Below the pieces are notes generated by a model. That model did not search any database, had not been told where the DNA came from, and was given only the letters and a program-made list of their open reading frames with translations. 64,000 nt of DNA from Asterias rubens (lineage: Eukaryota), in contig NC_047066.1 of assembly GCF_902459465.1 (NCBI RefSeq), positions 4,402,001 to 4,466,000 of the forward strand, given 5' to 3'. Below are positions 7,094-25,130 of this stretch, one piece after another; the first letter of the stretch is position 1, and every line of letters starts with the position of its first letter. Position numbers and translations under genes: made by a program.

Positions 7094-7269
7094 TTAAGTA
7101 GAAAGAATATCATGCCTGTGCATGTGGCCTATCTGTTCTGGGTCACCAATATGGTGATTCAATCTTGAGCAACAGCCAGTAAGGCAAGGAGAGGTCAGCA
7201 CACAAAATCAGCTGAACTAGTTTATTATCAACTGACCCTTGACGACCCTTGGTGACCTTTGAATTGACC

Positions 7270-10200
7270 TCACCAAGTTGGAGCAGTGTTGGCCAGACGG
7301 CGCATTCGCCTGATGAGAAAAAAAAAGGGGGAAAATAAAGTGGTTAATATTAATTATCTAGATACAGACACTGTACAAGCTATTGTCACATTTTCTTAAA
7401 AACAAATTTAAGAATGAAAACTGATTAGTGCATTATCACAAATATAAAGCGGATAATCTTTAGTGAGGTAGATGGTAGACTGGGCCCCTACAGGGCCCTG
7501 TCTTTATCAGCAATGATAACGACAGGTACTTGCTTTTCAGATCCAGTGATTCCATTGGATACAATGTCATTGGATAAACGTGCAGTGACATAAGCTTTCC
7601 ATTGATGGGCTTTAATTGGTCGGGGTGATTTATGTGCCGCTGACAAACCAAACGAACACTCCCATCACATCTGCCATACCTCAAAGAGGCTTATGTACTT
7701 GCATGTAATACTGAGTGTAAAATAACGTGGACTAGGTAGCTCTATGTGAAATGAATGTAGGTCAAAGGTGAACGTACAGGCCGGCTTGGGGCCGGTTTCT
7801 GGCTTTATTAGGGACTTTTCGTTTTCAACGACGGATGGTTTTGCGACGGTAAAGATGACATTTGGCGTCATCTGCGCATGCGTCGGCTTTGAGGACGGTC
7901 GTCCCTCAATTTCTACGACAGTACTTGGGATGAATCTTCGTTGTGCTGAAAACGACAACGTTTAGATGAACAACCGTCGCAGAACCATCCGTCGCCGAAA
8001 ACGAAAAGTCCCTATTCACGAGCCTCGAAGTGGGACGTCAGATGTTCAGGCTAGGCAGATGGCAGATGTTCCGGTTAAAATCAAGCCACTAGAATTCACC
8101 ACAAGGGGGGCGCTATGACTCACCTGGTATTTCGATCTTGATCCCTGATCTTCTTCTCCATCTCGGCGTCTGTCAACGTCTCAAGGAAGGGGCACCATTG
8201 GTCGGCTTCTCCTTGGTTACGTACCGCAATCTCAACAGTGGGTAAGGGGGATTCACTGAGAATGTGGAATAATATATAATAACGTCATGTTTGTTTTACC
8301 CATATGCACTGATGTGTGTTAGCACTGTATACTCAGTACTTTCCTGAGCTCCGAGATTGCCCGGTAGCTAGAGGCAGTTCGAATAGAATATTTTAGCAGT
8401 GGGTAACGTTAGATTTAATAGACGGAAATATTAATAATGATATTACATAGTATATCTTAGAAATTCTTAACAATCGAAATGATTCCTTAATAAAAACATG
8501 GGCCCCCTTACGATTAAAGGAACATTACAGAATTGGTAAGAAACAAAAATCGTGAAGATCACAGATTTGCATAAAACTTAAACGGTCTAATGATGATGAT
8601 AGTAGAAAACATCCCTTGAAAAATTTCTGTTTGAAATATTTGATGAGAAATAAATAATCTAACTTTGCGTTTGGAGTTTATCGCTCAGTGAGTGCTTTAT
8701 TCAATTTTGTTTGGGCATCGATGCAATGCAAAATTTGTAATTGTTTTTCACTATTCTCTCGTGACCCAGATGGCCGATCGATCTCAAACTTCTACAGGTT
8801 TGTCAGTTAATGTATATGGTGGATTACATAAAGTGCTTACACTGCCAGCAACTGTTTTGTTAGCAAAAACCAATTCTGTAATGTTCCTTTAAACAAGGTT
8901 AACAAATTTAGATTGAAAATTATCTTAGGCATGAAGATTAAAATTGCAAAACCAGAGTCCAGAATGCTCAGGGATAACACAAGAAAATACACAGCATCTT
9001 AAAGGCAGTGGACACTATTGGTAATTACTCAAAATAATTATTGGCATAACAACCATCTAAACGCACACAACTTTGTGTTGCAAGGGTTATTTTTCTTTCA
9101 TTATTATCTCACAACTTCGATGGCCAATTGAGCTCAAATTTTCACAGGTTTGTTATTTTATGCATATGTTGAGATACACCAACTGTGAAGGCTAGTCTTT
9201 GACAATTACCAATAGTGTCCACTGCCTTGAACAAAAATATGTAAAGTGGTTTTTGGTTTATAACAAAATGCACAAAAAGTGACTTTCCTAAAAGCACATA
9301 ACTCTCCAAACAGGTTCTGAATGAACATGCAACACAAATAAATAATCTAAAAGCAACAGTTATGAATTCTTTTAAAATAAGCATTTTTAACAAGCCAAAT
9401 GTAGAGGCGAGGCTTGTATTCTTCGCCAACTTTGGTTTTAATACATCATGCCTTAACCTTAACCCCGGAGTTATTCACTAGAATTCTACATCACTCTTCT
9501 ACATCAATCCAATATCACACAATTAACATCCAAACTGTTGGACACTTTATTGGTATACCTGATCCAAAGTAAAACACCCAGTTTAATGGTGTTACAACAA
9601 AAGAAATAGAACTGGATTTTAAATGATCGAGGAGAAGAAAACAATATAATAATATTCATATTCATATTCATAACACATTTACAAGCACACATACACACAT
9701 TAAAAATATTTAAGAAAACAAAGTAAAACAACAGTGGCGTGTCCAGGAGAGCAAAAAAATATAAAATAAAATAAAAATCTGAAATAAATCTCCAAAAGGC
9801 GTATGTCTCCTAAGAAAAGTGGGTAATTGGGTTACAAATCACTGCATTTTAATCATTAAATTTAACAAAGCACAAACAGGTAAGCCTACCATAATTTGGT
9901 TTCCCAGCCAAATTAAAACATCATATTAAAATGTGACAAGCAAAGTGTTAGCCAGAGGGGTGACTGGGTGTCTTTATGGATACCCTGTTTTATCTGTCAT
10001 TTACTTGTATTCATGTATTGTACAAACAATTTAGTCGCCCAGTTTTGAAATTTCAAGCCATTATGGAAACCTTTTTACAAAATCTTCGTATCCTGATCAC
10101 GTCTGATCCCATCCCACGTAAAGTAGACACAGTTTAAATGCGCAGACCTCAGTGCAACAAAATAAAAGCAAACTTGCTGTTGGATTTGAGGGGTTGGTGG

Positions 10201-13200
10201 TTTGTAAAAAAAGAAGGGAAACAAAGGTATGTTCTGTAAAGATGACCAACCTGAAAGCATATGTTCTCTGATGCCAGCTGAGTTGCCCTCTGATGCTGTA
10301 GGCGATGGCCGTTACAAACTCACCGCCCAGACCCAGGTCGGCGCACAGCTTGAGGGCGTATTCCTCCGGGCTGTTGTCTTTGCAAGCCATGTCCCACTCA
10401 AACTGATCCACTAGGGAGATGTTTCCAACGTGGATGTTCAACTAGGAGCAAGACAAGGAAGAAATGAGATTAATAGATGTATAATTTACATCGGGAGTAA
10501 AGAATATTGATTTAATCCATAGAAATAGAACCCAGAGAACGCTGAGCTCGGCCACCCTCTGTGTCGTTTGTGGACGCAGCGTATCGATACCACGCGATAC
10601 GCGCGTATGGCAAAATTATCATCGCGTGAGACGCGTGTATGGCAAAATGGCAAGATGTCAGCGCACATAGACCGTTTTTACTGTGTTCATAGGTCAATGA
10701 TGATGTCATTGTATGGCAAAATTGTATAGCAAAATATTTTGCCATACATGCGTAACAAAAATGGCGTATGTGCGTCCATAAAAATGGTCTCACAACGAAA
10801 CCGCACGCACAATGAGACACTCAGCATTCTCCGGGTTCTATTTCAATGGTTTAATCCAAACACCGATTTATGTAAAACATTGTGCATCTGACTCTGAACT
10901 ATTAAGTCTGCAAAGCATGCTAATCACACATTTTTTTGTAATGAAAAACAATAATGAAATTTCAGTTTTAGTTGCGGGAGGAAAACCATATAGGGAAAAC
11001 CAAGGGACTGAAAAATCCAGTCGACATGCAAGGCTCCGGTCCGGGCATCGAACCGGGACCACAAGAGTTGGAAGGCAGGGACAGGACCGATTGAGCCAAC
11101 CTGACTACCTACAGGTTTTTTGACGTGGATACTCAGTACTTTCCACGACTTACTAGACCCAGAACCTCAAACATTTTACAAATAAGGTAATAACAGACTC
11201 TGTGCATCACAAGAAAATCAAAACTACCGGTTTTGACGCATTGTGGACTATTTCTTTCTCCCTTGATTACCTCACTTCTTTCAAGAAAATGTTCATGCTC
11301 ACAGAGATTTTAAGAAATCTTGAGAAATTGATTTGCCGAAACCCACATAACCTCCATATGAACATGTACAAAATCCTAAAGCATAAAGTGTTTTTCTGCT
11401 TATGGATCTACGTACTGAACTGGTACCTGCTTAAACACAGTGAGTGGTTATGGTGTCAAAATCATTTGTCATCATATCTCGCCCTCACCCCCCTCCCCTA
11501 CACCCCTCCTTCCCGACACTCACCTTCAAAATGACTCTCTGATCCGATTGGTCCTCCAGTATACTTGTGTCTGCTGGGAAGGCATCAATCTGTGTACGGA
11601 TGGCTTGGGCGATGGACTGTACAAAGTTGACTGGAGGGAGATCCAGATCCTCGCATAAAATTTCAGCGAACATCTCAGGCGTGATTAATGTCTCTGTAAA
11701 TTTAAATTATAATAATAATAATAATGTTTAAAATTTATAGTGCGCCCCTTACATACAAAATGATCAAAGGCGCAGAACACATGTTAAGAAGCACAGAGTG
11801 GAAGAAAAAGACAAAGAAAAAAGACCAGGCCGGTGCCAAAACAAAAGTCTGGGGATACCTTGCATCAAAGCCTACGGCCGATATTGGTGACTGTCAAAGA
11901 CCCTTGTGTATCGCAATAAACAAAGGAAATAACAAACCTGTGAAGTTTTGAGCTCAATCGGTCATAAAAGTCGCACAAATAGTGAAAAACCCAATCATCA
12001 CATTTCAGACTCATGAGATATAAAATTATGTTTGTACTTACTCATTTAAAGGCAGTGGACACTATTGGTAATTACTCAAAATAAATTATTGGCATAAAAC
12101 CTTTCTTGGTGATGAGTAATGGGGAGAGGTTGATGGTATAAAACATTGTGAGAAATGGCTCCCTCTGAAGTGCCATAGTTTTTGAGAAAGAAGTATGTGT
12201 CCATGAATTTGATTTCGAGACCTCAGATTTAGAACTTGAGGTCTCGAAATCAACCATCTAAACGCACACAACTTCGTGTGACAAGGGATTTTTCTTCTTT
12301 CATTATTATCTCGCAACTTCGATGACCGATTGAGCTCAAATTTTCACAGGTTTGTTATTTTATGCATATGTTGAGATACACCAACTGTGAAGGCTAGTCC
12401 TTGACAATTACCAATAGTGTCCACTGCCTTTAATTAAAAAAACTATAGCATTTAAAGCATAAATACAATACTCATATACTTAGACACACAATGAGTAGGC
12501 CCTACTACTACTCTGACTCATAGTGAGTACTACTATTCAGACTCATAAGGAATTCCTCATACTCATAGGTTAGTACAAGTACTCGCACAGAAAGGGAATT
12601 ACTCATTCTTATGGCAAAGTACTATAACTAAGTACTATTTTTCAGACTCATAGAAAAGAACTACTACTCCGACTTATAGCAAAATACTAGTATTCAGACT
12701 CGTAGCACTCAGAGTTCTAGTACTCAGACTGATAAGGAACATTGTAAGCACATCATTACGTGCTAAGCATTATCTTGATTTTTTTTCTTCTTCTGTTTCT
12801 TCTTTGGGTTTTTTTCTTGATACTTTCCGAGTCCTGTACAAAAATATCACAGGTATATTACTTGAATGAGATTTGAACCCACGACCCTTGCAATTCTAAA
12901 GCAGTGTCTTGCCAACTAGACTACCGTAATTGCCCGGTAGCTAGAAGCAGTTCGAATCCTATGTTTTGGCAGGCTTGTTATTTTATGCTTAAGTTGGGAT
13001 ACACAAAGTGAGAAGACTGGTCTTTGACAATTACCAAACGTGTACCTTCTCTTTAAGAAGCACAGAGTGGAAGAAAAAGACAAAGAAAAAAGACTGGTCA
13101 CCAGGCCAGCGCCCAAACAAAAGTTTGGGTATACGTCGCATCAAAGCCTGCGGCCGATATTGGTGACTGTCAAAGACCCTTGTGTTCGAATACTATGTTT

Positions 13201-16200
13201 TGGCAGCGGGTACCACAACAATATAATGTTAAACATCTGTTATTAATATTATCTTAAAATTTAGGTTGAGAGGGACTCACCGTTCTTATTCCACGTAAAG
13301 GTGTCCCTGAGTTTCTGACCTTCAATCTCCATATCAAGCCTGATGGGTACTAGTGTCTCTGGCATGTCTGCATTGTCATGGATTATGGCTGGATCATGAT
13401 CATCATAGCTGCGGAAGAACAACATTCAGGGATTGAAATGATACACAATGAAAGTGTATAAACTCTTCGCTTATGGTAAACAGAGCCATGGAACTAGTTA
13501 AGAGCACTGCACTCAAACTCTGGTGTTTTTGATTAGCAGAGTCTGGGTTTTGGTCCAAGTCGTGACACATGTGTCCTTAAGCAAGGAACTTAACCTTGAT
13601 GCTTCGTCCTTAGGATAGGGCGTTGAGCCGTTGGTCCCTTGTGTTGTGTAACACACATAAAAGAACCCAGTGCACTTATCAAAAAGAGCAGAAGCCCTGG
13701 TGTTCCTGGTTTGATTGGCTGCTTATTACACCACAGCACCTTGTAAACCATTGTATGAAGCTATGTAAAAATGAGTGGGTCTCTTAATTCAAACCTAGTC
13801 CCACATAACTTGCAGGAAAATACGAATGTTGAAGCGCCTTGAGCATCACTGAGTGACAGATATCATCGCTAAATATAAGAAGCCACTATACTACACTTAC
13901 CACATGGGAAATGTTCGTTGTCTTTTCGGACCGACTCGATTACGAGAGATGCTGGTGGAGCACGGTACAGCGTCCAGGTGATGTGAGCTGTTTGGTATAG
14001 CTGGTACCCAATCCCTGCTGCGTTTGGGTTTAGCTTCTCGTAGGTTATTGGTGTCTGTGCTGATTGCGACTGCCCGGTACTTTGAATCCCGGCCCTCGAG
14101 GATCTCCTCAACCTCTGTGGACTTCAGGAGAGTAACGTTGGTGGCAAGTCCATGTTGGCCGAAACCTAAAATAGAATTAAGATTGTTAGGTTTTGTTCTG
14201 CCTCGACGGCATAGTGGGTATGGAGGGTGGATGCATTTATGCGAGTAGGAATGAGACAATCACATGGTAACAAAGCATCAAATTGCCAAAGTATTGCAAA
14301 CTTGAAAAATAAGTTTTTCTAATCTCGCACACATAGAGCTCTTTGAACAAGCCCAACTAGGTCGATCACTGTTCTGTCTGGCTTTATAGTAAACTCTTCA
14401 ATTACATAAGGGCCAACGCATGTGTCACCCTGGTTTTGGCCTTGGTGCCCCTTCACAAGTTTTTTATAGAATTTAACATAAAAGCATCCTGTGCAACTAA
14501 TGCAAAATGGCGTCTTGAAGATGATAATCTAGGCCAGTTCAATCATAGGCACATGTATATATCCTAAACTGATACCAAGGTTACCCATCCTGATATAACA
14601 GAAATTTACTTGACTACAAAATGAAGAAAAACATTACGATTGACAATTTAAAACCATTTGAGTGGAGGAACTTTTCTAATTTGCCATACATGTATGGCAA
14701 TACATACATGTATGTATTTTACTTTGTGCACAAAATAAATTCCAATTTTGTTAAAACTACATCCTAAAACACCAGGTCATCATTCCCATGCCACTTACGA
14801 TCTCCTATTGTGACTATTTTCTTGCGTTCTTCTACTGTTGCCAACTTTCTCCATAGCGATGGGTACTTTTTGTAGAGTGAGCCACGGAACATGCGCAGAT
14901 AGTACCCAACCTGCAAAACAAAATTGAAATATTATTATTTGTTTGATTTTTTTCTTCATTTTTTCTGAAAAGTTTATTCCACACTTATAATGGATTTTAT
15001 AACCTTTTCCTTTTCTATGGCTCACACAGGTTTTTTTTAAAAAGGGAAATAAAGGCAGAAATTCACGGCAAGTGGTGTGTCGTGCAGAGCTGTATGCTTC
15101 ATTTTTGAAAGGGCAAAGGCACCAAGGCAATTTCTCCTTGGTACAGGGCACCCTATAAAGGAAATTGTAAATTTCTACTGCAGCATTTCAAGGGCATCAA
15201 GGCAATGACCAGGGGGCATGGAGGCAATCGCCTTCGTTGCCTCTGTGCCTCTTTGAAGTATCAGGCAGAGTCGTTGTCCAGCGGTTGAGCTCCGGTAGAG
15301 GCACTTGTGTCCTGATAATAAGCTAGACACTTTGTAAACCACTGCTTCATGCTTCGGATGGGACATAAAATAAAGCTGTAGGTCTAGCTCCTGTGGCTGT
15401 GTGTGTTGTTTAAAAAACCTATATCAACGCACACAAAAGGGTCCTACTACTTGCCGTCAACTCGCCGTCAACTCACTTCGCCGTCAACTCGCTGTCAACT
15501 CCTCCAATATACATTTAAAATCCACAAAAGAAACATAGAACTGTAAAGTATCAGCTCAAAGAGAATTCGCGAAAGTTTTAGGTCATATTTCGGAATAAAA
15601 ATTGAGTTTTTTTCTCTTGAAAAAATTATCTCGAAACAGCAAAACCGTCGGCCGCCATCTTGCTTTTTCACATTGATTAGTCTTGGCCCAAGATGTCAAT
15701 GACTGGTACTTTTTTTTTATCAACACAAAGTCGTTTTTGTGAATGAATTTTTACTGAAAACCATGAGAAATATGTAGTTTAGCCCAGACTTAACACTTCC
15801 GTGTACCATTTATAAATTTTTCATGTAAATTTAATGAGTTGACGGCACGAAAATGAATTGACGGCGAGTTGACGGCAAGTCGGCAAGTTGACGGCAAGTC
15901 GGCGAGTTGACGGCAAGTAGTAGGACCGCACACAAAATATCCCAGTAAATATCAGTAAGTATACACACTTATCGCAAAGAGACTAGAACTATTTCGGTTT
16001 CTACCGCTATCGTCTCCTGTAACTATAAAATGTATTCAGAGTTCCGTATTCAAACTCAGAATGAAACAGCAGGTAAATTTATTTAATGGCCTTTTGATTG
16101 ATATTGATTGAAAACTTTTCTGTTGTAATTCATAATTGTGTACGACGTACGAGGGGAATGTGCGTGCTTCAGCAGGTTCACGCTTTGAATGGTCAAACAA

Positions 16201-16591
16201 TGACTGAGTTGAGAGGGGAACAAATCCGTATCCTGCCACCACCTTTTCCGTTTAAATATGAGATTTCTAACAACAATAGCAATCTCATAAACATATTAAA
16301 ATCGCTCCAACAGGCGGAACAACACACAAAACACACACGTCATAGTTTGACATCGATGAAATCATAGATGTAGAAATATTGACAAAGAATATTTCAACGA
16401 ACGTGAACGTTCCAAACTCTATATTCTGCGCCCAATGTACGGGTCTCTTACTTTAAATTCAACTGATTTGAAATCTCACTTACCTCAGAACCGATCATGA
16501 ACTTGTCTCCACCTTCCTCAAACTGGAAAACATCAGGTTTTTTGCCGTAAGTTCGCGGAGGAATCGGGACTTTCTCACCGTTGGCCGCCAT
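7270..16591 (-). CDS. SMARCB1: SWI/SNF (BAF) core subunit SMARCB1/SNF5/INI1, full length, 381 aa
   Basis: Coding exons (minus): 16484-16591, 14799-14910, 13901-14165, 13281-13408, 11524-11693, 10251-10441, 8124-8255, 7270-7309. All introns are GT-AG with matching phases; 1146 nt in total. Translation has TYGKKP...[26 protein letters not shown] (winged helix), [34 protein letters not shown] (RPT1), [18 protein letters not shown] (RPT2) and [26 protein letters not shown], all recognisably SNF5. Confidence 0.97.
7811..8012. mobile_element. 202-bp MITE with ~40-bp TIRs in last SMARCB1 intron
   Basis: GGGACTTTTCGTTTTCAACGACGGATGGTTTTGCGACGGT versus ACCGTCGCAGAACCATCCGTCGCCGAAAACGAAAAGTCCC, with TA on both flanks. 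Confidence 0.8.
8518..8888. mobile_element. TTAA-flanked MITE, second Kolobok-like family (second copy 26983-27368)
   Basis: TIR AGGAACATTACAGAATTGG ... CCAATTCTGTAATGTTCCT, with TTAA on both sides; the homologous copy at 26983-27368 also has TTAA flanks. Confidence 0.8.
10518..10848 (+). mobile_element. MITE with ~30-bp CCATAGAAAT TIRs and internal GTATGGCAAAAT repeats (second copy ~23083-23400)
   Basis: CCATAGAAATAGAACCCAGAGAACGCTGAG ... CTCAGCATTCTCCGGGTTCTATTTCAATGG; the homolog at 23083-23400 has a decayed right end. Confidence 0.75.
12050..12429 (-). mobile_element. Family-A MITE, complete (SMARCB1 intron 5)
   Basis: TTAA-AGGCAGTGGACACTATTGGTAATT ... AATTACCAATAGTGTCCACTGCCT-TTAA. Confidence 0.85.
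12868..12970 (-). mobile_element. Second tRNA-like dispersed repeat (fragments at ~8320-8410, 13185-13230, 31820-31900, 32690-32820, 50940-51000)
   Basis: Reverse-strand B-box GGTTC(G/A)AAT(C)CC and A-box-like TAGTCTAGTTGG within a recurring GCAATTCTAGAGCAGTGTCTT...GATTGCCCGGTAGCTAGAGGCAGTTCGAAT unit. Confidence 0.6.
15439..15928. mobile_element. Non-autonomous Mutator-like (MULE) element in SMARCB1 intron 1
   Basis: TIR GGGTCCTACTACTTGCCGTCAACTCGCC / GGCGAGTTGACGGCAAGTAGTAGGACCG, with a 9-bp direct repeat CACACAAAA at 15430-15438 and 15929-15937. The MULE call rests on the TSD length. A remnant of the family is at ~54930-54968. Confidence 0.75.
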
Positions 16592-16625: not shown

Positions 16626-16641
16626 ACGCCCTCTCGTGAAA
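16626..16641 (-). promoter_or_regulatory. Conserved 16-bp element TTTCACGAGAGGGCGT upstream of SMARCB1
   Basis: Identical 16-mer also at 20956-20971 and 25115-25130, each 34-36 nt upstream of the ATG, with diverged flanks. Confidence 0.7.
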
Positions 16642-19167: not shown

Positions 19168-20919
19168 TCATAATGGAGCCTGCTCAATAGTGTCCATGTA
19201 CTTCAACCAGTCGGGTGTTAAGAACAAATATTCATCAACCTCGGAGCTTGGGCTAGGCGTAAGTTGGAGTTCTTTGTGCACAGTTAACGGACAGGCCACA
19301 GTGGAGTGTTTTGCTTCGGGAGCCTTCACAGTCTTTGTATAAGCGGATGAGCGGTACTTTGCATCTCTGCCAGCGAGGATCTCCTCTATCTCTGAGACCT
19401 TTAGAAGAGTAATGCTGCTGGGAAGTCCATGTTTGTAGAGACCTTAAAATAAAAAACAACATTGTAATTGTAAGGCGATTTTTAGCCAGGTGGTGGTGGT
19501 GAATATGTAGGGAAGGTGGACACTGGCCTCGATAATGAGAACGAAAATGTTAACAATGCACACCCTTGATTAGTTAATTAAGCGTATGAGTATTCTGCAT
19601 GAAGCAATTCAACCAAAAGAATGCGCTCTCTTTGCACCCTGATTGTGATCGTTTTCGTTATCGCTGCAGTCTAAACGACAAGATGGTACAAAGCATCAAT
19701 TAATGGCCAAATTATTGCAAGCCAGGAACTAGGCCACGCATGACCTCCAATGCCCCATGTCTTGGCCTTGTTGCCCCTTTAAGAGTTTCCCTATGACTGT
19801 AAGAAATGCCTTTGTAAGGTGAAAATGGAAGTGCCCTTTGTAAAATGAAAATGGGCATGCGCTACAAAACAGCTTGGTTGAATTTATTTTAAGACACTGG
19901 ATACTATTGGTAATGTCAAAGACCATTCTTCTCTCTTGGTGTATCTCAACATAATATGCATAAAATGACAAACCTGTAAAATGTTTAAGCTCAATTGGTC
20001 GTTGAAGTTGTGCGATAATAATGAAAAAAATAACAATTTAACACCCTTGTCACACGAAGTTGCTTTCAAGACCTTAAAATCTAATTCTGAGGTCTCAAAA
20101 TCAAATTCATGGAAAATTACTTCTTTTTCAAAAACTATCTTACTTCAGAGGAGGGTTACGTTATCGCAACTACTTCAGAGGGAGCCGTTTCTCACAATTT
20201 TTTTATAATATCAACAGCTCCCCATTTCTTAACCAAGTGGGCCTAAGGTTTTATGCTAATAACTATTTTGAGTAATTACCAATAGTGTCCACTGCCTATA
20301 ATGGTTATACTTTCTAGGTCACTTACGTCGATGTGCTGTCTTGGCTATTAAACAACGTTGTTCTCTTGTTGGTTTCTTTCTCCTAAGAAGAGGATACCTT
20401 TTGTAGACTCCGCCAGCCATCATGTCCAGATACCACCCCACCTGCAAACCACCAAAAAAAAAATAACTTTGTCAATGTTTGGCTTCCAGAGCCAGAGGAT
20501 TTTTTTCAGGGAAATTATAGTATACAGGCAGAAATTCATGGTCCAAGATTTTCAAAATACACTCAATATTCGTATTACAAATAATTGTTGTTATTAAAAA
20601 TCGGCTGTTTTCGACAGGGTGCTAAATTTGTTTTTGTGCATGTCCCAAGTTTGCAGCAAGGTCCCGTAGTGATACAGCGCTGTACTCCATTTAGAAAAAA
20701 ACACTCTCCCTCGGACCATGGCATTCACATTCACAACTGTAGACTGTACTGTACCATTTTACGAATCTCTTACTTTCTAATTGAACCGATGGTATGAATC
20801 GTACTTACCTCAGTACCTATCATATACCTTTTTCCACGTTCCTTAAACTGGAAAACATGTGGTTTTTTGCCGTAAGTTCGTGGAGGTACGGGAGCTGCCT
20901 CATCGCTGCCCTCCGCCAT
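19168..20919 (-). CDS. SMARCB1-like paralog A: winged-helix-only protein, 166 aa, 3 exons
   Basis: Exons 20809-20919 ([37 protein letters not shown]), 20327-20441 (VGWYLDMMAGGVYKRYPLLRRKKPTREQRCLI...), 19168-19442 (...HGLPSSITLLKVSEIEEILAGRDAKYR...EYLFLTPDWLKYMDTIEQAPL*). Intron positions and phases (0,1) match SMARCB1 exons 1-3, splice sites are GT-AG, and there is no internal stop. Expression is not demonstrated. Confidence 0.85.
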
Positions 20920-20955: not shown

Positions 20956-20971
20956 ACGCCCTCTCGTGAAA
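20956..20971 (-). promoter_or_regulatory. Same 16-bp element upstream of paralog A
   Basis: Plus-strand ACGCCCTCTCGTGAAA, 36 nt from the ATG; a G-rich GC-box-like tract (GGGTGGGGGCGG, ~21001-21012) lies further upstream. Confidence 0.7.
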
Positions 20972-22129
20972 CAGAAAAGGAGAAAACACAATGGTCGGGC
21001 CGGGTGGGGGCGGAACCACCTAAATCACAGTTTTCAAATAGTTCATAGTTCAATTTCAAGGTTTATTGTTCAATTCAACCATTTAAAATGACAAAATATA
21101 AAATTGAAGGAGACAAAACTTAAATAATAGATTAAAGTGGGGGAGTCCGCTGGCATTTAAGGAGTTCAAAACTCATCACTTATGTCATGTTCATCCTCCA
21201 TGCTTCCCTTGTATGTCTTTGTCTTATAGTCATGCTGATGGTCTTAGTAAACTATGCATTTTGTTTGTAGGCCTATTCTCAGCTTGCATCATTGTATTTT
21301 CACTTATTTCTTCACAACTTGTTTCCCACCCTAAGCAGCGACCACACCACTACACAGCAGTACAAAATGCCATACAGTACAGTTTGTTAATCCTCAAATC
21401 AAAATATCAAAGATCTTGTTTCATGTTTATGCAACCGAAAACCATCAATGAATGTTTTGCATTTGAACAATGTTTTTAATTCTTAAAAGATTGAATTTGT
21501 TGCAAACTGACATACAAAATATTGCAAAGATGTAATATTTGCAATATTTTGTAGGTCAGTTTACAACAATGTCAATAGTTTATACTTTTTAACTAAAATC
21601 TTTTACAATTTTATACAAATCTGTACATAATATTGATTTAATTGTAATTATTTTATATAACGTCCTTTACACTATGGGTTTTTGCCAATAAAATACTATA
21701 AATAAGTTGAACAAAATAAAAATTTCAGCCTAAAAAGACGTTTTAGCTATTTACATCATTTATGGTTGAACCTGTAAAAAAAAAAACATTTCAAGCTCCA
21801 TGATGAACAGCCGCTTCCTGTGGCAGGTGGAAACTGTCACAATACGAGGCTCCACCATTGATGTCCTCACTCCGTCCATAAACCAGCAGTACATAAAATA
21901 ATGGTTAATAGAGATATTCATAGAATATCTGCTAGCAGTGCTAGAGAATATCATTACATGGTGTTACCGCAAACCTTCGTAATTCCACCATGCAAAGTTT
22001 CAAATTCACTTAAAGACACTGGACACTATTGGTAATTGTCAAAGACCAGTCTTCTCACTTGGTGTATCCAAACATAATATGCACAAAATAACAACGGGTT
22101 GTTTTGAAACCTGTAAAATAAACTCACTT

Positions 22130-22269
22130 GGAGACTTTTAGGACGCTTGGTGGCAGCAGACTTACCAGGTGAAATCCATTGTTCTCGGTCATATGCGCAC
22201 GCTCAGAACTACGTAAACAATGGGAATATACCTGGTAAGTCTGCTGCCACCTAGCGTCCAAAAGTCTCC
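22130..22269. repeat. 140-bp palindromic insertion inside a family-A MITE
   Basis: GGAGACTTTTAGGACGCTTGGTGGCAGCAGACTTACCAGG / CCTGGTAAGTCTGCTGCCACCTAGCGTCCAAAAGTCTCC; a right-arm remnant is at ~62763-62812. Confidence 0.8.
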
Positions 22270-22675
22270 CATTGGTCATCAAAGTTTCGTGAGAATAATG
22301 GAATAAAAAAAAACACCCTTGTCGCACCAGTTGTGTGCTTTTAGATGCTTGATTTCGAAACTTCAGCTGAGGTCTGAAAATCAATTCAATATTTTAGTGA
22401 GAAGTTAACTCTTTCTCAAAAACTACATTACTTCAGCTGTTTCTCACATTGTTTTATACAACCAACAGCTCTCCATTACTAGTTACAGAGTAAGTTTTTA
22501 TGCTAACAATTATTTTGAGTAATTACCAATAGTGTCCAGTGCCGGCCCTTTAAGAAAAATATCGGCATAAAACCCATGATATGATTTGTGACCAAATCAT
22601 TAGTACTTAAAACAGACTAGATTTCAGGTCAATGTCAGGCAAAAATTAATTCAATATCAGGCATATTTGCTTTAA

Positions 22676-23030
22676 AGGCAGTGGACACTATTGGTAATTA
22701 CTCAAAATAATTATTAGCATAAAACCTTTCTTGGTAACGAGTAATGGGGAGAGGTCGATGGTATAAAACATTGTGAGAAACAGCTCCATCTGAAGTGCCA
22801 TAGTTTTCGAGAAAAAAGTAATTTTCCACGAATTTGATTTCGAGAAAATCATCCATCTAAACACACACAACTTCGTGTGACAAGGGTGTTTTCTTCTTTC
22901 ATTATTATCTCGCAACTTTGATGACCGATTGAGCTCAAATTTTCACAGGTTTGTTATTTTATGCATAATGTTTGAGATACACCAACTGTGAAGGCTAGTC
23001 TTTGACAATTACCAATAGTGTCCACTGCCT
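22676..23030 (-). mobile_element. Family-A MITE, complete. Further copies or fragments at ~3590-3920, 9003-9227, 17957-18352, 19892-20297, 22013-22545, 33661, 34395-34612, 35060-35435, 36829, 38559-38898, 43594-43745, 50217-50610, 61278-61640
   Basis: Same TIRs and the internal signature GTCACACGAAGTTGTGTG...GAGCTCAAATTTTCACAGGTTTG in all copies. Confidence 0.85.
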
Positions 23031-23516
23031 TTAATTAATTCTACTTGAGTTGTATAACCTAGCAGGCTGATATTTAGGGTTTCCATAGAAATTGAACCCG
23101 GAGAACGCTGAGTTCGGCCGTCCTCTGTTGGCGTGACATATCGATAAAACGCAATACGCATGTATGGCAAAATGATCATCACGTGACACGCGTGTATGGC
23201 AAATTGAGCATACGTGACACGCGTGTATGGCAAAATGGCAGCGCACATAGACCGTTCCCATGTTTTCATTGGTCAATGTGACGTCTACTGTATGGCAAAA
23301 TAATTTGCATACACGCGAACAAAAATGGCATATGCGAGTCCATAAAAATAGTCACACAACGAAACCGTATCCACAGTGACACACTTAGCATTCTATTTCT
23401 CTGCGGTTCCAAATACTTGTCACTGTCCAGTAGTAATATCCATCAATGCACTGAAAGCCTGGAAATTGCATTGATTACAGATGAATATTGCGGTGCCAGA
23501 GAATTAATCACTGTCA

Positions 23517-23776
23517 TAATAGACTTGTGGACAGGTCTTTAAATGTCTGTCGTGGTGATAGCGTTCCGACTCTATTCCGAATCTCCCTGCAATTCCTGCG
23601 GTATTCTCGTGAGACTGCTGCCCCCACGAGTCTACTGCTCTCATGACTACAGTCCAATGGGGAGTAGAAGTGGGCAACCAGCAGCTTGCCCGAGAGTAGT
23701 GATCTCGCGAGAGCACCACCAAAACTTGACTATCTCAGCGCGGCAGACCACTAACAACCTGTCCACAAGTCTACTA
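23517..23776. mobile_element. 260-bp MITE with 19-bp TIRs and 3-bp TSD at the stop codon of paralog B (relative at ~63590-63835, inverted)
   Basis: TAATAGACTTGTGGACAGG ... CCTGTCCACAAGTCTACTA, with TCA at 23514-23516 and 23777-23779. Paralog A shows the empty site (TAATCACTTTCATAATGG). Confidence 0.8.
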
Positions 23777-25079
23777 TCATAATGGAGCCTGCTCAATAGT
23801 GTCCATGTACTTCAAACAGTCGGGTGTTAAGAACAAAAATTCATTATTCTCAGAGCTTGCACTGGTCAAAAGTTGGCATTCTTGTGGCAAAATCAAAGGA
23901 GAGGGTAGAGATGAGTGTTTTGAAGGAGCTTTCAAGGTCTTTTTGGCTTTCATAGCCTTGTTGGTTTTCACAGTATATCTGGTTTTCACCCTCTTTCTGG
24001 CTTTCACAGTCTTTTTGGCTTTCACCGTCTTTTTGGCTCCCCGGTACTTTACATCTCGGCCCTCGACTATCTCCTCAATTTCTGTAGCCTTCACGAGAGT
24101 AACGAAGTAGGGAAGGTTGTGACTGTCGGGACCTGAACAACAAAAAATACAATTGCAACATGATTTTTCTTACCTTTACTCATTTCTCAAAAACTACAGC
24201 ACCTAAGTTAGTAACATTTTCATGGAAGCTTTGTACTAAGTTCAATGTAAATCTGTGAACATTAGAAAAAAAGTGAAAAGACCCTTTAACAAATTAATTC
24301 AACTTTCTGGGTCACTTACAAATACAATCCAGAATCTTGAGTAACATCTTGCGCTCTGTTGCTGATGTCACTTTTCTCCAGAGCAAGGGAAACCTTTTGT
24401 AGATTGAGCCACTGTAAATGCCGAGATAATCACCGACCTGTGAAACATTTTTTGAATATTTTTTTTACTCTTGAACATTTAATTGTTGTCCCCAAATAAA
24501 AATGACAACGTAACCCTGACAGCGAGAGGAGGCCTCCTCCTGACGGCGGGAGGAGGGTCACATTATCGCAACTAATGTCACACTCACCATGCTCACACAA
24601 CTATTCAAAAATAGTGTTGAACTTGAAGAATTAGTTTTATTAAAAAGTTATTTTAAAAAAACAACTTTTGAAAGAAAGTTTACAAAAATGTTGAATTTAT
24701 TTTAGTCAGAGAACATGGAGGTAGAAATAGACCTGCATGTATGCGAGGTTTGTTTATCAACAACAGGCCCTCAGCTCCCACAACCCACCGCGTGTTTCAT
24801 GCACAAACACAACAACAACAAAACAAAACACAACACAATCAATCCTCCTTCAATTTCAATGCCAAACAAAAAGACAATCCCTATATTTAAGTTAGGCCCA
24901 ATGCCCATATAATAATACGATGTATGATGACACTTGAGCGGCTTACCTACCTCAGAACCTATCATAAATTTGTTTGTATCATCTACAACATTATCCAGAC
25001 GCAAAACTCGTGGTTTTTTGCCGTAAGTTGGGCGACGCACGGGGGCTTTGCCGGTCTCACTTTTTATTTTGGCTGCCAT
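23777..25079 (-). CDS. SMARCB1-like paralog B: winged-helix-only protein with Lys-rich hexapeptide repeat, 200 aa, 3 exons
   Basis: Exons 24951-25079 (MAAKIKSETGKAPVRRPTYGKKPRVLRLDNVVDDTNKFMIGSE), 24320-24437 (VGDYLGIYSGSIYKRFPLLWRKVTSATERKML...), 23777-24132 (...TLVKATEIEEIVEGRDVKYRGAKKTVKAKKTVKA...EFLFLTPDCLKYMDTIEQAPL*). GT-AG sites, phases 0 and 1 as in SMARCB1, open frame throughout. Confidence 0.85.
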
Positions 25080-25114: not shown

Positions 25115-25130
25115 ACGCCCTCTCGTGAAA
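25115..25130 (-). promoter_or_regulatory. Same 16-bp element upstream of paralog B
   Basis: Plus-strand ACGCCCTCTCGTGAAA, 35 nt from the ATG; a G-rich tract (GGGGTGGGCGGGG, ~25138-25151) lies further upstream. Confidence 0.7.

What the first reader, a model, noticed from the sequence alone, without database searches (positions are those of the whole stretch)
23927..24034. Histone-H1-like KKTVKA hexapeptide expansion in paralog B
Seen: six 18-bp units encode KKTVKA-KKTVKA-RKRVKT-RYTVKT-NKAMKA-KKTLKA directly after the WH domain. Paralog A has one unit at the same place (TKTVKAPEAKHS versus ...KTLKAPSKHS). The units have diverged from each other but stay in frame and basic. Established: Lys/Ala-rich low-complexity tails after a winged-helix globular domain are the architecture of linker histone H1. 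Inference: B may have convergently acquired an H1-like layout (WH + basic tail) from a remodeler subunit, for example as a chromatin-condensing or sperm-nuclear protein.
Basis: partly seen in the sequence, partly recalled or inferred. Interest (0 to 1): 0.72.

Follow-up and report, generated by a model that had tools for sequence, protein, structure and literature searches.

The report
Basic hexapeptide repeat in starfish SMARCB1-derived gene
A small starfish gene, copied from the first part of the chromatin-remodeller subunit SMARCB1, carries a real, transcribed six-unit repeat that makes a short, strongly positive segment after its DNA-binding-type domain, but nothing tested here shows that it acts like linker histone H1.

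Summary
Window 23927-24034 (minus strand) holds six in-frame 18-bp units encoding KKTVKA KKTVKA RKRVKT RYTVKT NKAMKA KKTLKA. Paralog A has a single unit (TKTVKA) at the same place.

The repeat lies in exon 3 of a three-exon, 200-codon gene, "paralog B". B is one of two tandem winged-helix-only duplicates beside the full SMARCB1/SNF5 gene of a starfish (earlier scan notes say Asterias rubens).

- Spliced RNA contigs from two organism labels run through the repeat without gaps.
- A second starfish assembly (GCA_032118995.1) has the same 200-codon gene with the same six units.
- Only 3 nucleotide changes separate the two repeat arrays: 2 silent and 1 L-to-V.
- The units kept their charge better than random mutation would allow (about 0.5-2% of simulations).

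The H1 reading is only partly supported.
- The charge density matches this genome's own H1 tails.
- But the segment is 36 residues (+17), against about 100 residues (+40 to +46) in H1.
- It is internal, followed by a 49-residue non-basic tail shared with A.
- The domain is INI1-type, not H1-type, and has lost two conserved DNA-contact arginines.
- The genome has at least 45 true H1 matches.

Most likely it is a disordered polycationic linker for electrostatic nucleic-acid or chromatin contact, for nuclear import, or both. Its function is untested. The scan also noted this stretch before, as s1-150537.

The parts
23927..24034 (-). Six 18-bp units that encode the 36-residue basic repeat, residues 116-151 of paralog B.
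   Evidence: Repeat finder: period 18, 6.2 copies, score 124. Translation. Shuffle control. Unbroken in RNA contigs X16 record 15, X1 record 8 and X2 record 22.
23777..24132 (-). Paralog B exon 3: the end of the winged helix, the repeat, the 49-residue tail and the stop codon (23777-23779).
   Evidence: AG acceptor at 24133-24134. Spliced contigs join 24130 to 24318 with a 2-nt GT ambiguity, in X16 and X2.
24320..24437 (-). Paralog B exon 2: the core of the INI1-type winged helix.
   Evidence: PF21459 scores 37.1 bits against a cut-off of 27 on this exon alone. It matches PDB 5AJ1 and 6LTH SMARCB1 at E 5e-7. It is spliced to exon 3 in RNA contigs.
24951..25079 (-). Paralog B exon 1 coding part, from the ATG at 25079-25077 to the GT donor after 24951.
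   Evidence: The same exon is present in the sister-species gene call, L001 7156-7284. RNA contig depth is seen in X1 and X2 (table 2).
23780..23842 (-). The last 21 codons of B (EFLFLTPDCLKYMDTIEQAPL), almost identical to those of A at 19171-19233.
   Evidence: There are 0 synonymous and 2 non-synonymous differences between A and B here, against dS of about 0.7 elsewhere. Identity stops 2 nt past the stop codon.
25115..25130 (-). A 16-nt upstream element, TTTCACGAGAGGGCGT, 36 nt before the ATG of B. It is also 37 nt before the ATG of A (20956-20971) and 35 nt before that of the parent (16626-16641).
   Evidence: Three exact copies in the window against 0 expected by chance. There are only 6 copies in the whole genome.
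19321..19338 (-). The single TKTVKA unit of paralog A, homologous to the position of B's array.
   Evidence: A is XP_033628359.1, 166 aa.
19168..20919 (-). Paralog A (exons 20919-20809, 20441-20327 and 19442-19168), the comparison copy.
   Evidence: My model is identical to P0001. PF21459 scores 83 bits. RNA contigs cover 19177-19440.
10223..16591 (-). The parent SMARCB1/SNF5 gene, with winged-helix exons and SNF5-domain exons. It is the source of the duplicates.
   Evidence: Genome-wide PF21459 and PF04855 matches. Exon reading. A 381-aa gene call sits in the syntenic locus.

Best explanation
The repeat is a genuine coding minisatellite in an expressed starfish gene, paralog B (200 aa, about 22.7 kDa, pI about 9.9). 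B arose by tandem duplication of the promoter and first three exons of SMARCB1 and kept only the INI1-type winged helix.

The unit descends from the linker just after the winged helix. The parent has [11 protein letters not shown] there and paralog A has YTKTVKAPEAK. In B the unit expanded to six copies, presumably by slippage or unequal exchange, before the two sampled starfish species split.

Inferred mechanism: the array forms an intrinsically disordered segment of 36 residues with net charge +17. This segment gives non-specific electrostatic affinity for DNA, RNA or acidic chromatin surfaces. It also creates a bipartite nuclear-import-like pattern (KK, ten residues, RKRVK). This may compensate for the loss of two DNA-contact arginines in the winged helix itself.

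Shown: the repeat, the frame, splicing, transcription, conservation in two species, retention of charge, and loss of R37 and R40. Inferred: disorder, nucleic-acid or chromatin binding, and nuclear import.
For: - Repeat and frame.
- Transcription and splicing: X16 record 15 and X2 record 22 join exon 3 to exon 2 exactly at the predicted sites and cross the repeat with no gaps. X1 record 8 also covers the repeat.
- Exon 3 is held at 0.87 share or more by 11 runs, most of them small, from several studies. The intron-containing 1.5-kb stretch is held at only 0.35-0.69 in the six of these runs that were also listed for it.
- The sister-species locus L001 has a called 200-aa gene with identical exon structure and six units. 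The repeat shows 2 synonymous changes and 1 L-to-V change. There are no indels in 603 coding nt, while intron 1 has 135 gap columns.
- The A and B open frames are both intact despite dS of 0.63-0.79 between them.
- Between species, B has dN 0.027 and dS 0.083, while the parent has dN 0 and dS 0.055.
- With 15 substitutions from the unit consensus, keeping at least 17 basic residues, no acidic residue and no stop occurs in 0.5-2.4% of simulations.
- Mean hydropathy of 0.36 at mean net charge of 0.47 lies far on the disordered side of the charge-hydropathy boundary of 0.58.
- The winged helix belongs to PF21459. R37G and R40S in B come, read against the conserved residues listed in PMC4509781.
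- The isolated human domain binds DNA only in the high-micromolar range (PMC4509781), so extra charge would matter.
Against: - No binding, localisation or tissue data exist.
- Between species, B's non-synonymous divergence (2.7%) is about the same as its intron divergence (2.1-3.2%). The test for omega below 1 in B alone is weak, with p between 0.02 and 0.12 depending on the assumed synonymous fraction. Short-term constraint could therefore be slight.
- The simulation assumes a star-like origin from the consensus unit, yet units 3 and 4 share two changes.
- Paralog A works with a single unit, so the expansion is not required for the basic role of this gene type.
- Structure prediction gave no usable model.
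- B was not found in the protein collections for this genome.
Confidence: 0.55

Rival explanations
1. Tolerated, essentially neutral expansion. The 18-bp unit expanded in a naturally disordered linker of a fast-evolving duplicate. It persists because it does no harm. The charge is just the inherited composition of the founding unit.
For: A and B evolve much faster than the parent: between the two species there are 7 and 12 amino-acid changes against 0. B's dN is about equal to its intron divergence. A has only one unit. The site corresponds to the parent's linker between the winged helix and the first SNF5 repeat.
Against: Charge, absence of acidic residues and open frame are retained in only 0.5-2.4% of random-mutation simulations. 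The lysine at unit position 5 is invariant, and position 4 is always V, M or L. The unit number and frame are unchanged between species, with 2 silent changes and 1 conservative change.
Confidence: 0.25
2. Remodeller decoy or adaptor. The winged-helix-only paralogs act through protein contacts, occupying or competing for the pocket that buries the SMARCB1 winged helix inside the BAF complex. B's repeat then serves mainly as a nuclear-import signal or spacer, not as a DNA binder.
For: A review reports that the winged helix is deeply buried in BAF, far from nucleosomal DNA (PMC9332782). Both paralogs lost the DNA-contact residues R37 and R40 but keep P14, K45, P48 and R52. All three genes share a conserved upstream element, which suggests co-expression with the parent. 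The repeat holds the patterns KRVK and KK-X10-RKRVK (and direct reading).
Against: No interaction was tested. The surface the winged helix uses inside BAF was not mapped onto A or B here. A +17 segment is more than import needs.
Confidence: 0.12
3. One reading: a convergent linker-histone-like or sperm nuclear basic protein that condenses chromatin through a winged helix plus a basic tail.
For: The layout is a winged helix followed by a lysine-rich segment. The K+R density of 47% matches this genome's H1 tails, one of which is also rich in K, T and V. The charge appears to be retained.
Against: The segment is 36 residues and +17, against about 100 residues and +40 to +46. It has no proline or SPKK motif. 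It is internal and followed by a tail of net charge -4. There is no PF00538 match. R37 and R40 are lost. The genome has at least 45 H1 matches, including one gene with SPKK-like N-terminal motifs. B is present in many small public runs, and in the three spliced-RNA runs laid here its contig depth is similar to A's.
Confidence: 0.06
4. Transcribed pseudogene: the open frame and the repeat are not translated.
For: B was not found among this genome's proteins in the collections searched. Protein evolution is fast.
Against: The 200-codon frame is intact in two species. The splice sites are intact and used. There are no coding indels. Both paralog frames survive at dS of about 0.7. The stop codon lies in the last exon. 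The sister species has a 200-aa gene call.
Confidence: 0.02

Closest known systems
SMARCB1/INI1/SNF5 N-terminal winged-helix domain (Pfam PF21459; PDB 5AJ1; chain M of BAF structures 6LTH/6LTJ)
   Same: B's exons 1-3 are homologous to it. Exon 2 alone passes the Pfam cut-off, the exon phases match the parent gene, and the repeat starts right where the human domain ends, around residue 112.
   Different: B has no SNF5 repeat domains or C-terminal helix. R37 and R40 are replaced (G and S in B, D and A in A). A new 49-residue tail shows no detectable match in the parent gene. The basic repeat is absent from the parent and from human SMARCB1.
Linker histone H1/H5 (Pfam PF00538 globular domain plus a K/A/P-rich C-terminal tail)
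   Same: The gross order is the same: a winged-helix fold class followed by a lysine-rich, probably disordered segment. The charge density is similar to this genome's own H1 tails.
   Different: The winged-helix family differs, with no PF00538 match. The basic segment is about one third of the length and about 40% of the charge. It has no proline or SPKK motif, is not C-terminal, and is followed by a slightly acidic conserved tail.
Paralog A of the same array (XP_033628359.1, annotated as SMARCB1-like, 166 aa)
   Same: It has the same three-exon structure, the same truncation, the same upstream element and the same C-terminal 21 residues. It also lost R37 and R40 and is also transcribed.
   Different: It has one TKTVKA unit instead of six. 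Its net charge is +9 against +20 for B.
Lysine-rich tandem-repeat DNA-binding tails in other proteins (SPKK repeats of echinoderm sperm H1 and H2B; bacterial H1-like KPAA or AKKA repeat proteins). This comparison rests on my own knowledge and was not tested here.
   Same: Short basic peptide units are multiplied in tandem to give a polycationic segment.
   Different: The unit KKTVKA lacks the S/T-P-K-K turn motif, and only six units are present. No sequence relationship was sought or found.

Membership tests
INI1_DNA-bd winged helix (PF21459) | Match to the family profile above the curated cut-off. | tested here: met
   B exon 2 alone scores 37.1 bits against a cut-off of 27, and exon 3 adds 17.2 bits over profile positions 60-82. 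The genome-wide exon hits agree.
INI1_DNA-bd winged helix (PF21459) | The conserved exposed residues at the putative DNA-binding site listed by Allen et al. 2015 (S30, E31, R37, R40, K45, R52). | tested here: not met
   B keeps S30, E31, K45 and R52 but has R37G and R40S. A has R37D and R40A. The parent keeps all six (residue list from PMC4509781).
INI1_DNA-bd winged helix (PF21459) | The compact fold of residues 10-110. | tested here: inconclusive
   The AlphaFold2 models were unusable: mean pLDDT 52.7 for the B exon-3 fragment and 36.8 for A with a shallow alignment.
SNF5/SMARCB1 core subunit | The two SNF5 repeat domains (PF04855). | tested here: not met
   The only PF04855 matches in the genome belong to the parent gene, at window positions of about 10223-13371. 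B's frame ends at 23777.
Linker histone H1/H5 | The globular domain of the Linker_histone family (PF00538). | tested here: not met
   B's exons give no PF00538 match at E up to 10. True H1 genes of this genome score about 100 bits.
Linker histone H1/H5 | A long (about 100 residues) C-terminal K/A/P-rich tail that ends the protein. | tested here: not met
   The segment is 36 residues and +17 with no proline, followed by 49 residues of net charge -4. The last 100 residues of this genome's H1s carry +40 and +46 with 6-8% proline.
Linker histone H1/H5 | A basic-residue density of about 40-50% in the tail. | tested here: met
   K+R is 47% in the repeat, against 47-49% in two H1 tails of the same genome.
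Expressed coding tandem repeat (minisatellite) | Head-to-tail units whose length is a multiple of three, in frame, transcribed, and conserved in a second species. | tested here: met
Classical nuclear import signal (pattern only) | K-(K/R)-X-(K/R), or two basic residues, then 10-12 residues, then at least 3 basic residues in 5. | tested here: met
   KRVK sits at residues 129-132. KK(116-117)-X10-RKRVK(128-132) was read directly from the sequence. This is a pattern match only, and import was not tested.

The most novel reading that the evidence does not exclude
B could be a lineage-specific small chromatin architectural protein. In that reading, a remodeller winged helix that lost its DNA-reading arginines was re-equipped with a polycationic segment of H1-tail charge density and a conserved C-terminal peptide. 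It would act as a convergent nucleosome or linker-DNA binder, like H1 or HMGN, that tunes chromatin or BAF access in sea stars.
Probability: 0.12. Interest if true: 0.7.

Novelty: new variant of a known kind. Interest (0 to 1): 0.4.

Why it matters
SMARCB1 is normally a single-copy tumour-suppressor subunit, and the role of its winged helix is still debated. The isolated domain binds DNA, yet it sits buried inside BAF (PMC9332782).

Natural, expressed winged-helix-only copies offer a ready-made experiment on what this domain does on its own. One copy has a six-fold basic expansion and the other has a single unit. The repeat itself is a modest example of how slippage in a disordered linker can build a charged module.

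If the repeat measurably changes DNA or nucleosome binding or localisation, it would show the birth of a new basic chromatin protein from a remodeller subunit. If it does not, it is an ordinary low-complexity expansion.

Tried and rejected
- **Word-index protein search with B exon 3:** nothing at E up to 0.01. This blank is uninformative, because the tool also missed paralog A, which shares long exact words with the query.
- **Profile search of A and B exon 3 against 1.84 billion representatives:** only A's cluster was found.
- **Search with A:** only A itself was found. So no B-like or A-like tail was found outside this lineage, and B has no protein id for this genome.
- **Full-length B in sequence tools:** Whole-protein Pfam, structure prediction and exact look-up of B were therefore left out.
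- **AlphaFold2:** the B exon-3 fragment and A with an 11-row fragment alignment both gave low confidence, so neither model was used.
- **Protein atlas look-alikes for B exon 3:** no usable hit.
- **Origin of the 49-residue tail:** a search in the parent gene at DNA and translated level found only chance-level matches.
- **A transposable-element origin for the C-terminal motif:** a 12-nt identity to the terminus of an abundant repeat was seen, but nothing extends beyond it. I treat it as unexplained or coincidental.
- **The array as part of a dispersed repeat:** rejected, because it is unique in the genome.
- **Literature:** no paper holds both SMARCB1 and Asterias.
- **Repeat-number variation among individuals:** none was seen in contigs of three RNA runs. 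Contigs drop rare variants, and no DNA run was laid.

Full report
**1. What is at the coordinates**

The window is a eukaryotic chromosome segment, G000:C5:4402001-4466000, from a 417.6-Mb genome. Earlier scan notes call it the starfish Asterias rubens. This fits the RefSeq-style accession of the neighbouring gene, but no tool showed me the organism name.

The tandem repeat finder reports an 18-bp array at 23928-24038 with 6.2 copies, 78% matches, no indels and score 124. Thirty shuffles of the window never exceeded 55. On the minus strand, in one frame, the array reads KKTVKA KKTVKA RKRVKT RYTVKT NKAMKA KKTLKA. It comes directly after ...EIEEIVEGRDVKYRGA. The array occurs nowhere else in the genome.

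**2. The gene around it**

All of the following lie on the minus strand.
- The full SMARCB1/SNF5 gene occupies about 16591-10223. It has winged-helix exons and SNF5-domain exons.
- Upstream of it lie two truncated copies of its first three exons.
- Paralog A has exons 20919-20809, 20441-20327 and 19442-19168 and encodes 166 aa.
- Paralog B has exons 25079-24951, 24437-24320 and 24132-23777 and encodes 200 aa.

These three are the only clear INI1 winged-helix copies in the genome. One further match, on another contig, is weak (E 2.3) and interrupted by stop codons. My model of A is identical to XP_033628359.1, named SMARCB1-like.

B's exon 2 alone exceeds the Pfam cut-off for INI1_DNA-bd, at 37.1 bits against 27. 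Exon 3 supplies the last 23 profile positions. Both exons align to the human SMARCB1 structures 5AJ1 and 6LTH. The repeat starts at the position of human residue 112 or so, which is where the folded domain (residues 10-110; PMC4509781) ends.

Codon-by-codon comparison shows that A's single unit and its flank (Y-T-K-T-V-K-A-P-E-A-K) line up with the parent's linker ([11 protein letters not shown]). So the unit was born from the linker between the winged helix and the first SNF5 repeat. It was multiplied only in B.

**3. Is it expressed and kept?**

Expression:
- In the single read-laying run, contig X16 record 15 (467 nt) lies on 23786-24130 and continues on 24318-24439.
- X2 record 22, from a different organism label, lies on 23911-24130 and continues on 24318-24435.
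- These joints are exactly the predicted exon 3 to exon 2 junction, allowing for a 2-nt GT ambiguity. Both contigs cross the whole array without a gap.
- X1 record 8 also covers the array.
- A's exon 3 is covered at similar contig depth in the same runs.
- Eleven runs, most of them small, hold at least 87% of the exon-3 words. Six of them were also listed for the 1.5-kb stretch with introns and hold only 35-69% of its words, which is the pattern expected of mRNA.
- One metatranscriptome contig (X5, 24005-24155) runs into the intron. It is unspliced RNA or DNA.

Conservation:
- A second starfish assembly, GCA_032118995.1 (locus L001), has the same gene order. It carries a called 200-aa gene at 7156-8553 with the same three exons, then A (166 aa), then the parent (381 aa).
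- The two B proteins differ at 12 of 200 residues.
- The array has the same six units. It shows two silent changes and one L-to-V change that turns unit 6 into KKTVKA.
- There is no indel in 603 coding nt, whereas intron 1 has 135 gap columns.

**4. Selection**

Between the two species:

| Gene | dN | dS | Amino-acid changes |
|---|---|---|---|
| Parent, first 161 codons | 0 | 0.055 | 0 |
| Paralog A | 0.018 | 0.046 | 7 |
| Paralog B | 0.027 | 0.083 | 12 |

Omega is about 0.3-0.4 for the paralogs. B's dN is close to its intron divergence of 2.1-3.2%. The excess of silent changes in B alone is only weakly significant, with p between 0.02 and 0.12.

Over the long term, A and B differ by dS of 0.63-0.79 with omega of about 0.6, and both frames are intact. 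By my rough estimate, hundreds of substitutions would have produced several stop codons in a pseudogene, so this is very unlikely for one.

Within the array there are 15 substitutions from the unit consensus. These left 17 of 18 basic positions, no acidic residue and no stop. Only 0.5-2.4% of random-mutation simulations do as well. The caveat is that the simulation assumes a star-like history, while units 3 and 4 share two changes. The lysine at unit position 5 is invariant, and position 4 is always V, M or L. I read this as moderate evidence that the charge and the pattern are kept by selection.

**5. Physical character**

- The 36 residues hold 14 K and 3 R, giving net +17. They have no D, E or P.
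- Mean hydropathy of 0.36 at mean net charge of 0.47 lies far on the disordered side of the charge-hydropathy line of 0.58.
- The array contains KRVK and the bipartite-type pattern KK-X10-RKRVK (and direct reading).
- After it come 49 residues of net charge -4, ending in EFLFLTPDCLKYMDTIEQAPL, which A shares.
- B as a whole has net charge +20 and pI about 9.9. A has net charge +9.

**6. The H1 comparison**

I tested it against this genome's own linker histones. There are at least 45 Linker_histone matches at about 100 bits, while B gives none at E up to 10.

Two H1 proteins read from the genome have last-100-residue tails with 43-45% K, 20-37% A, 6-8% P and net charge +40 to +46. B's segment matches them in charge density. 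It is also K/T/V/A-flavoured, like the clustered H1. But it is one third as long, lacks proline, and is not terminal.

The winged helix is of a different family. Both paralogs have replaced R37 and R40, two of the conserved exposed residues that Allen et al. place at the putative DNA-binding site: R40 in the helix predicted to enter the major groove and R37 in the loop before it (PMC4509781). B has G and S at these positions, and A has D and A. The parent keeps both residues.

The isolated human domain binds DNA only weakly, in the high-micromolar range. Inside BAF it is reported to be buried far from nucleosomal DNA (PMC9332782).

So "H1-like layout" holds only as a loose analogy. Membership in the H1 family fails on the domain test and the tail test.

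**7. Most likely mechanism**

I commit to this reading. The array is a disordered polycationic linker created by unit expansion. It raises non-specific electrostatic binding to DNA, RNA or chromatin and provides nuclear import, in a small winged-helix protein whose own DNA-reading surface is weakened.

The rivals are:
- a tolerated neutral expansion;
- a BAF decoy in which the repeat is only an import signal or spacer;
- a transcribed pseudogene.

Their weights are given in the Rival explanations section. None of the functional steps is shown. The assays listed under next steps would separate them.

**8. Side observations**

- A 16-nt element, TTTCACGAGAGGGCGT, sits 35-37 nt upstream of the ATG of the parent, A and B. 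It has only 6 copies in the genome. This suggests the duplicates kept the parent's promoter, and it argues mildly against a sperm-only expression pattern.
- The last 21 codons of A and B show no silent difference, although dS is about 0.7 elsewhere. The identity stops 2 nt after the stop codon. Since each species pair has since gained amino-acid changes there, an old gene-conversion tract is my preferred reading.

**9. Novelty and limits**

No paper in the searched library joins SMARCB1 and Asterias. A is annotated as SMARCB1-like. B is called as a gene in the sister assembly but was not found among this genome's proteins.

Limits of this work:
- tissue identity of the RNA runs is unknown to me;
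- only contigs, not raw reads, were available;
- only two closely related species could be compared;
- no usable structural model was obtained;
- full-length B could not be submitted to the sequence tools.

Noticed in passing
window 16626-16641, 20956-20971, 25115-25130 (minus strand): An exact 16-nt element, TTTCACGAGAGGGCGT, lies 35-37 nt upstream of the start codons of the parent SMARCB1 gene and of both winged-helix-only paralogs. The genome holds only 6 copies in total. It is probably a retained core promoter or 5'-UTR element.
   Followed up: partly
window 19168-19233 (A) and 23777-23842 (B), minus strand: The last 21 codons of A and B have 0 synonymous and 2 non-synonymous differences, while the rest of the genes have dS of about 0.7. 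The identity ends 2 nt after the stop codon. This may be an old gene-conversion tract or a constraint at the RNA level.
   Followed up: partly
window, e.g. 22021, 22683, 23013, 20280, 12412, 9210 (20 copies): An abundant short interspersed repeat has the terminus TTAAAGGCAGTGGACACTATTGGTAATT. It causes enormous contig depth at 19960-20359 and 21960-23159 in the RNA runs. It shares a 12-nt identical core (TGGACACTATTG) with the conserved C-terminal coding motif of A and B. The reason is unknown, and it may be chance.
   Followed up: partly
window 20327-20441 (A exon 2) and 24320-24437 (B exon 2): Both paralogs replaced R37 and R40, two conserved residues at the putative DNA-binding site (A: D and A; B: G and S). 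The parent keeps them.
   Followed up: yes
L002 (G000:C12:17921568-17924786): A 242-aa H1 gene has an N-terminal stretch rich in SP(K/R)-type motifs (SPRKPSPKRRPRSRSNSP...). It is a candidate sperm-type linker histone of this genome.
   Followed up: no
window 23011-23776 (minus strand): RNA contigs at depths similar to exon 3 tile the region from the stop codon of B down to about 23011. The only polyadenylation-like hexamer (ATTAAA) is at 23035. This suggests a 3' UTR of roughly 740 nt, but the repeat element nearby makes it uncertain.
   Followed up: partly
window 23777-25079: B was not found among this genome's proteins in the collections searched. The syntenic gene in assembly GCA_032118995.1 is called as a 200-aa product with no Pfam hit on record. 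B may be missing from this genome's annotation.
   Followed up: partly
   Followed up: no
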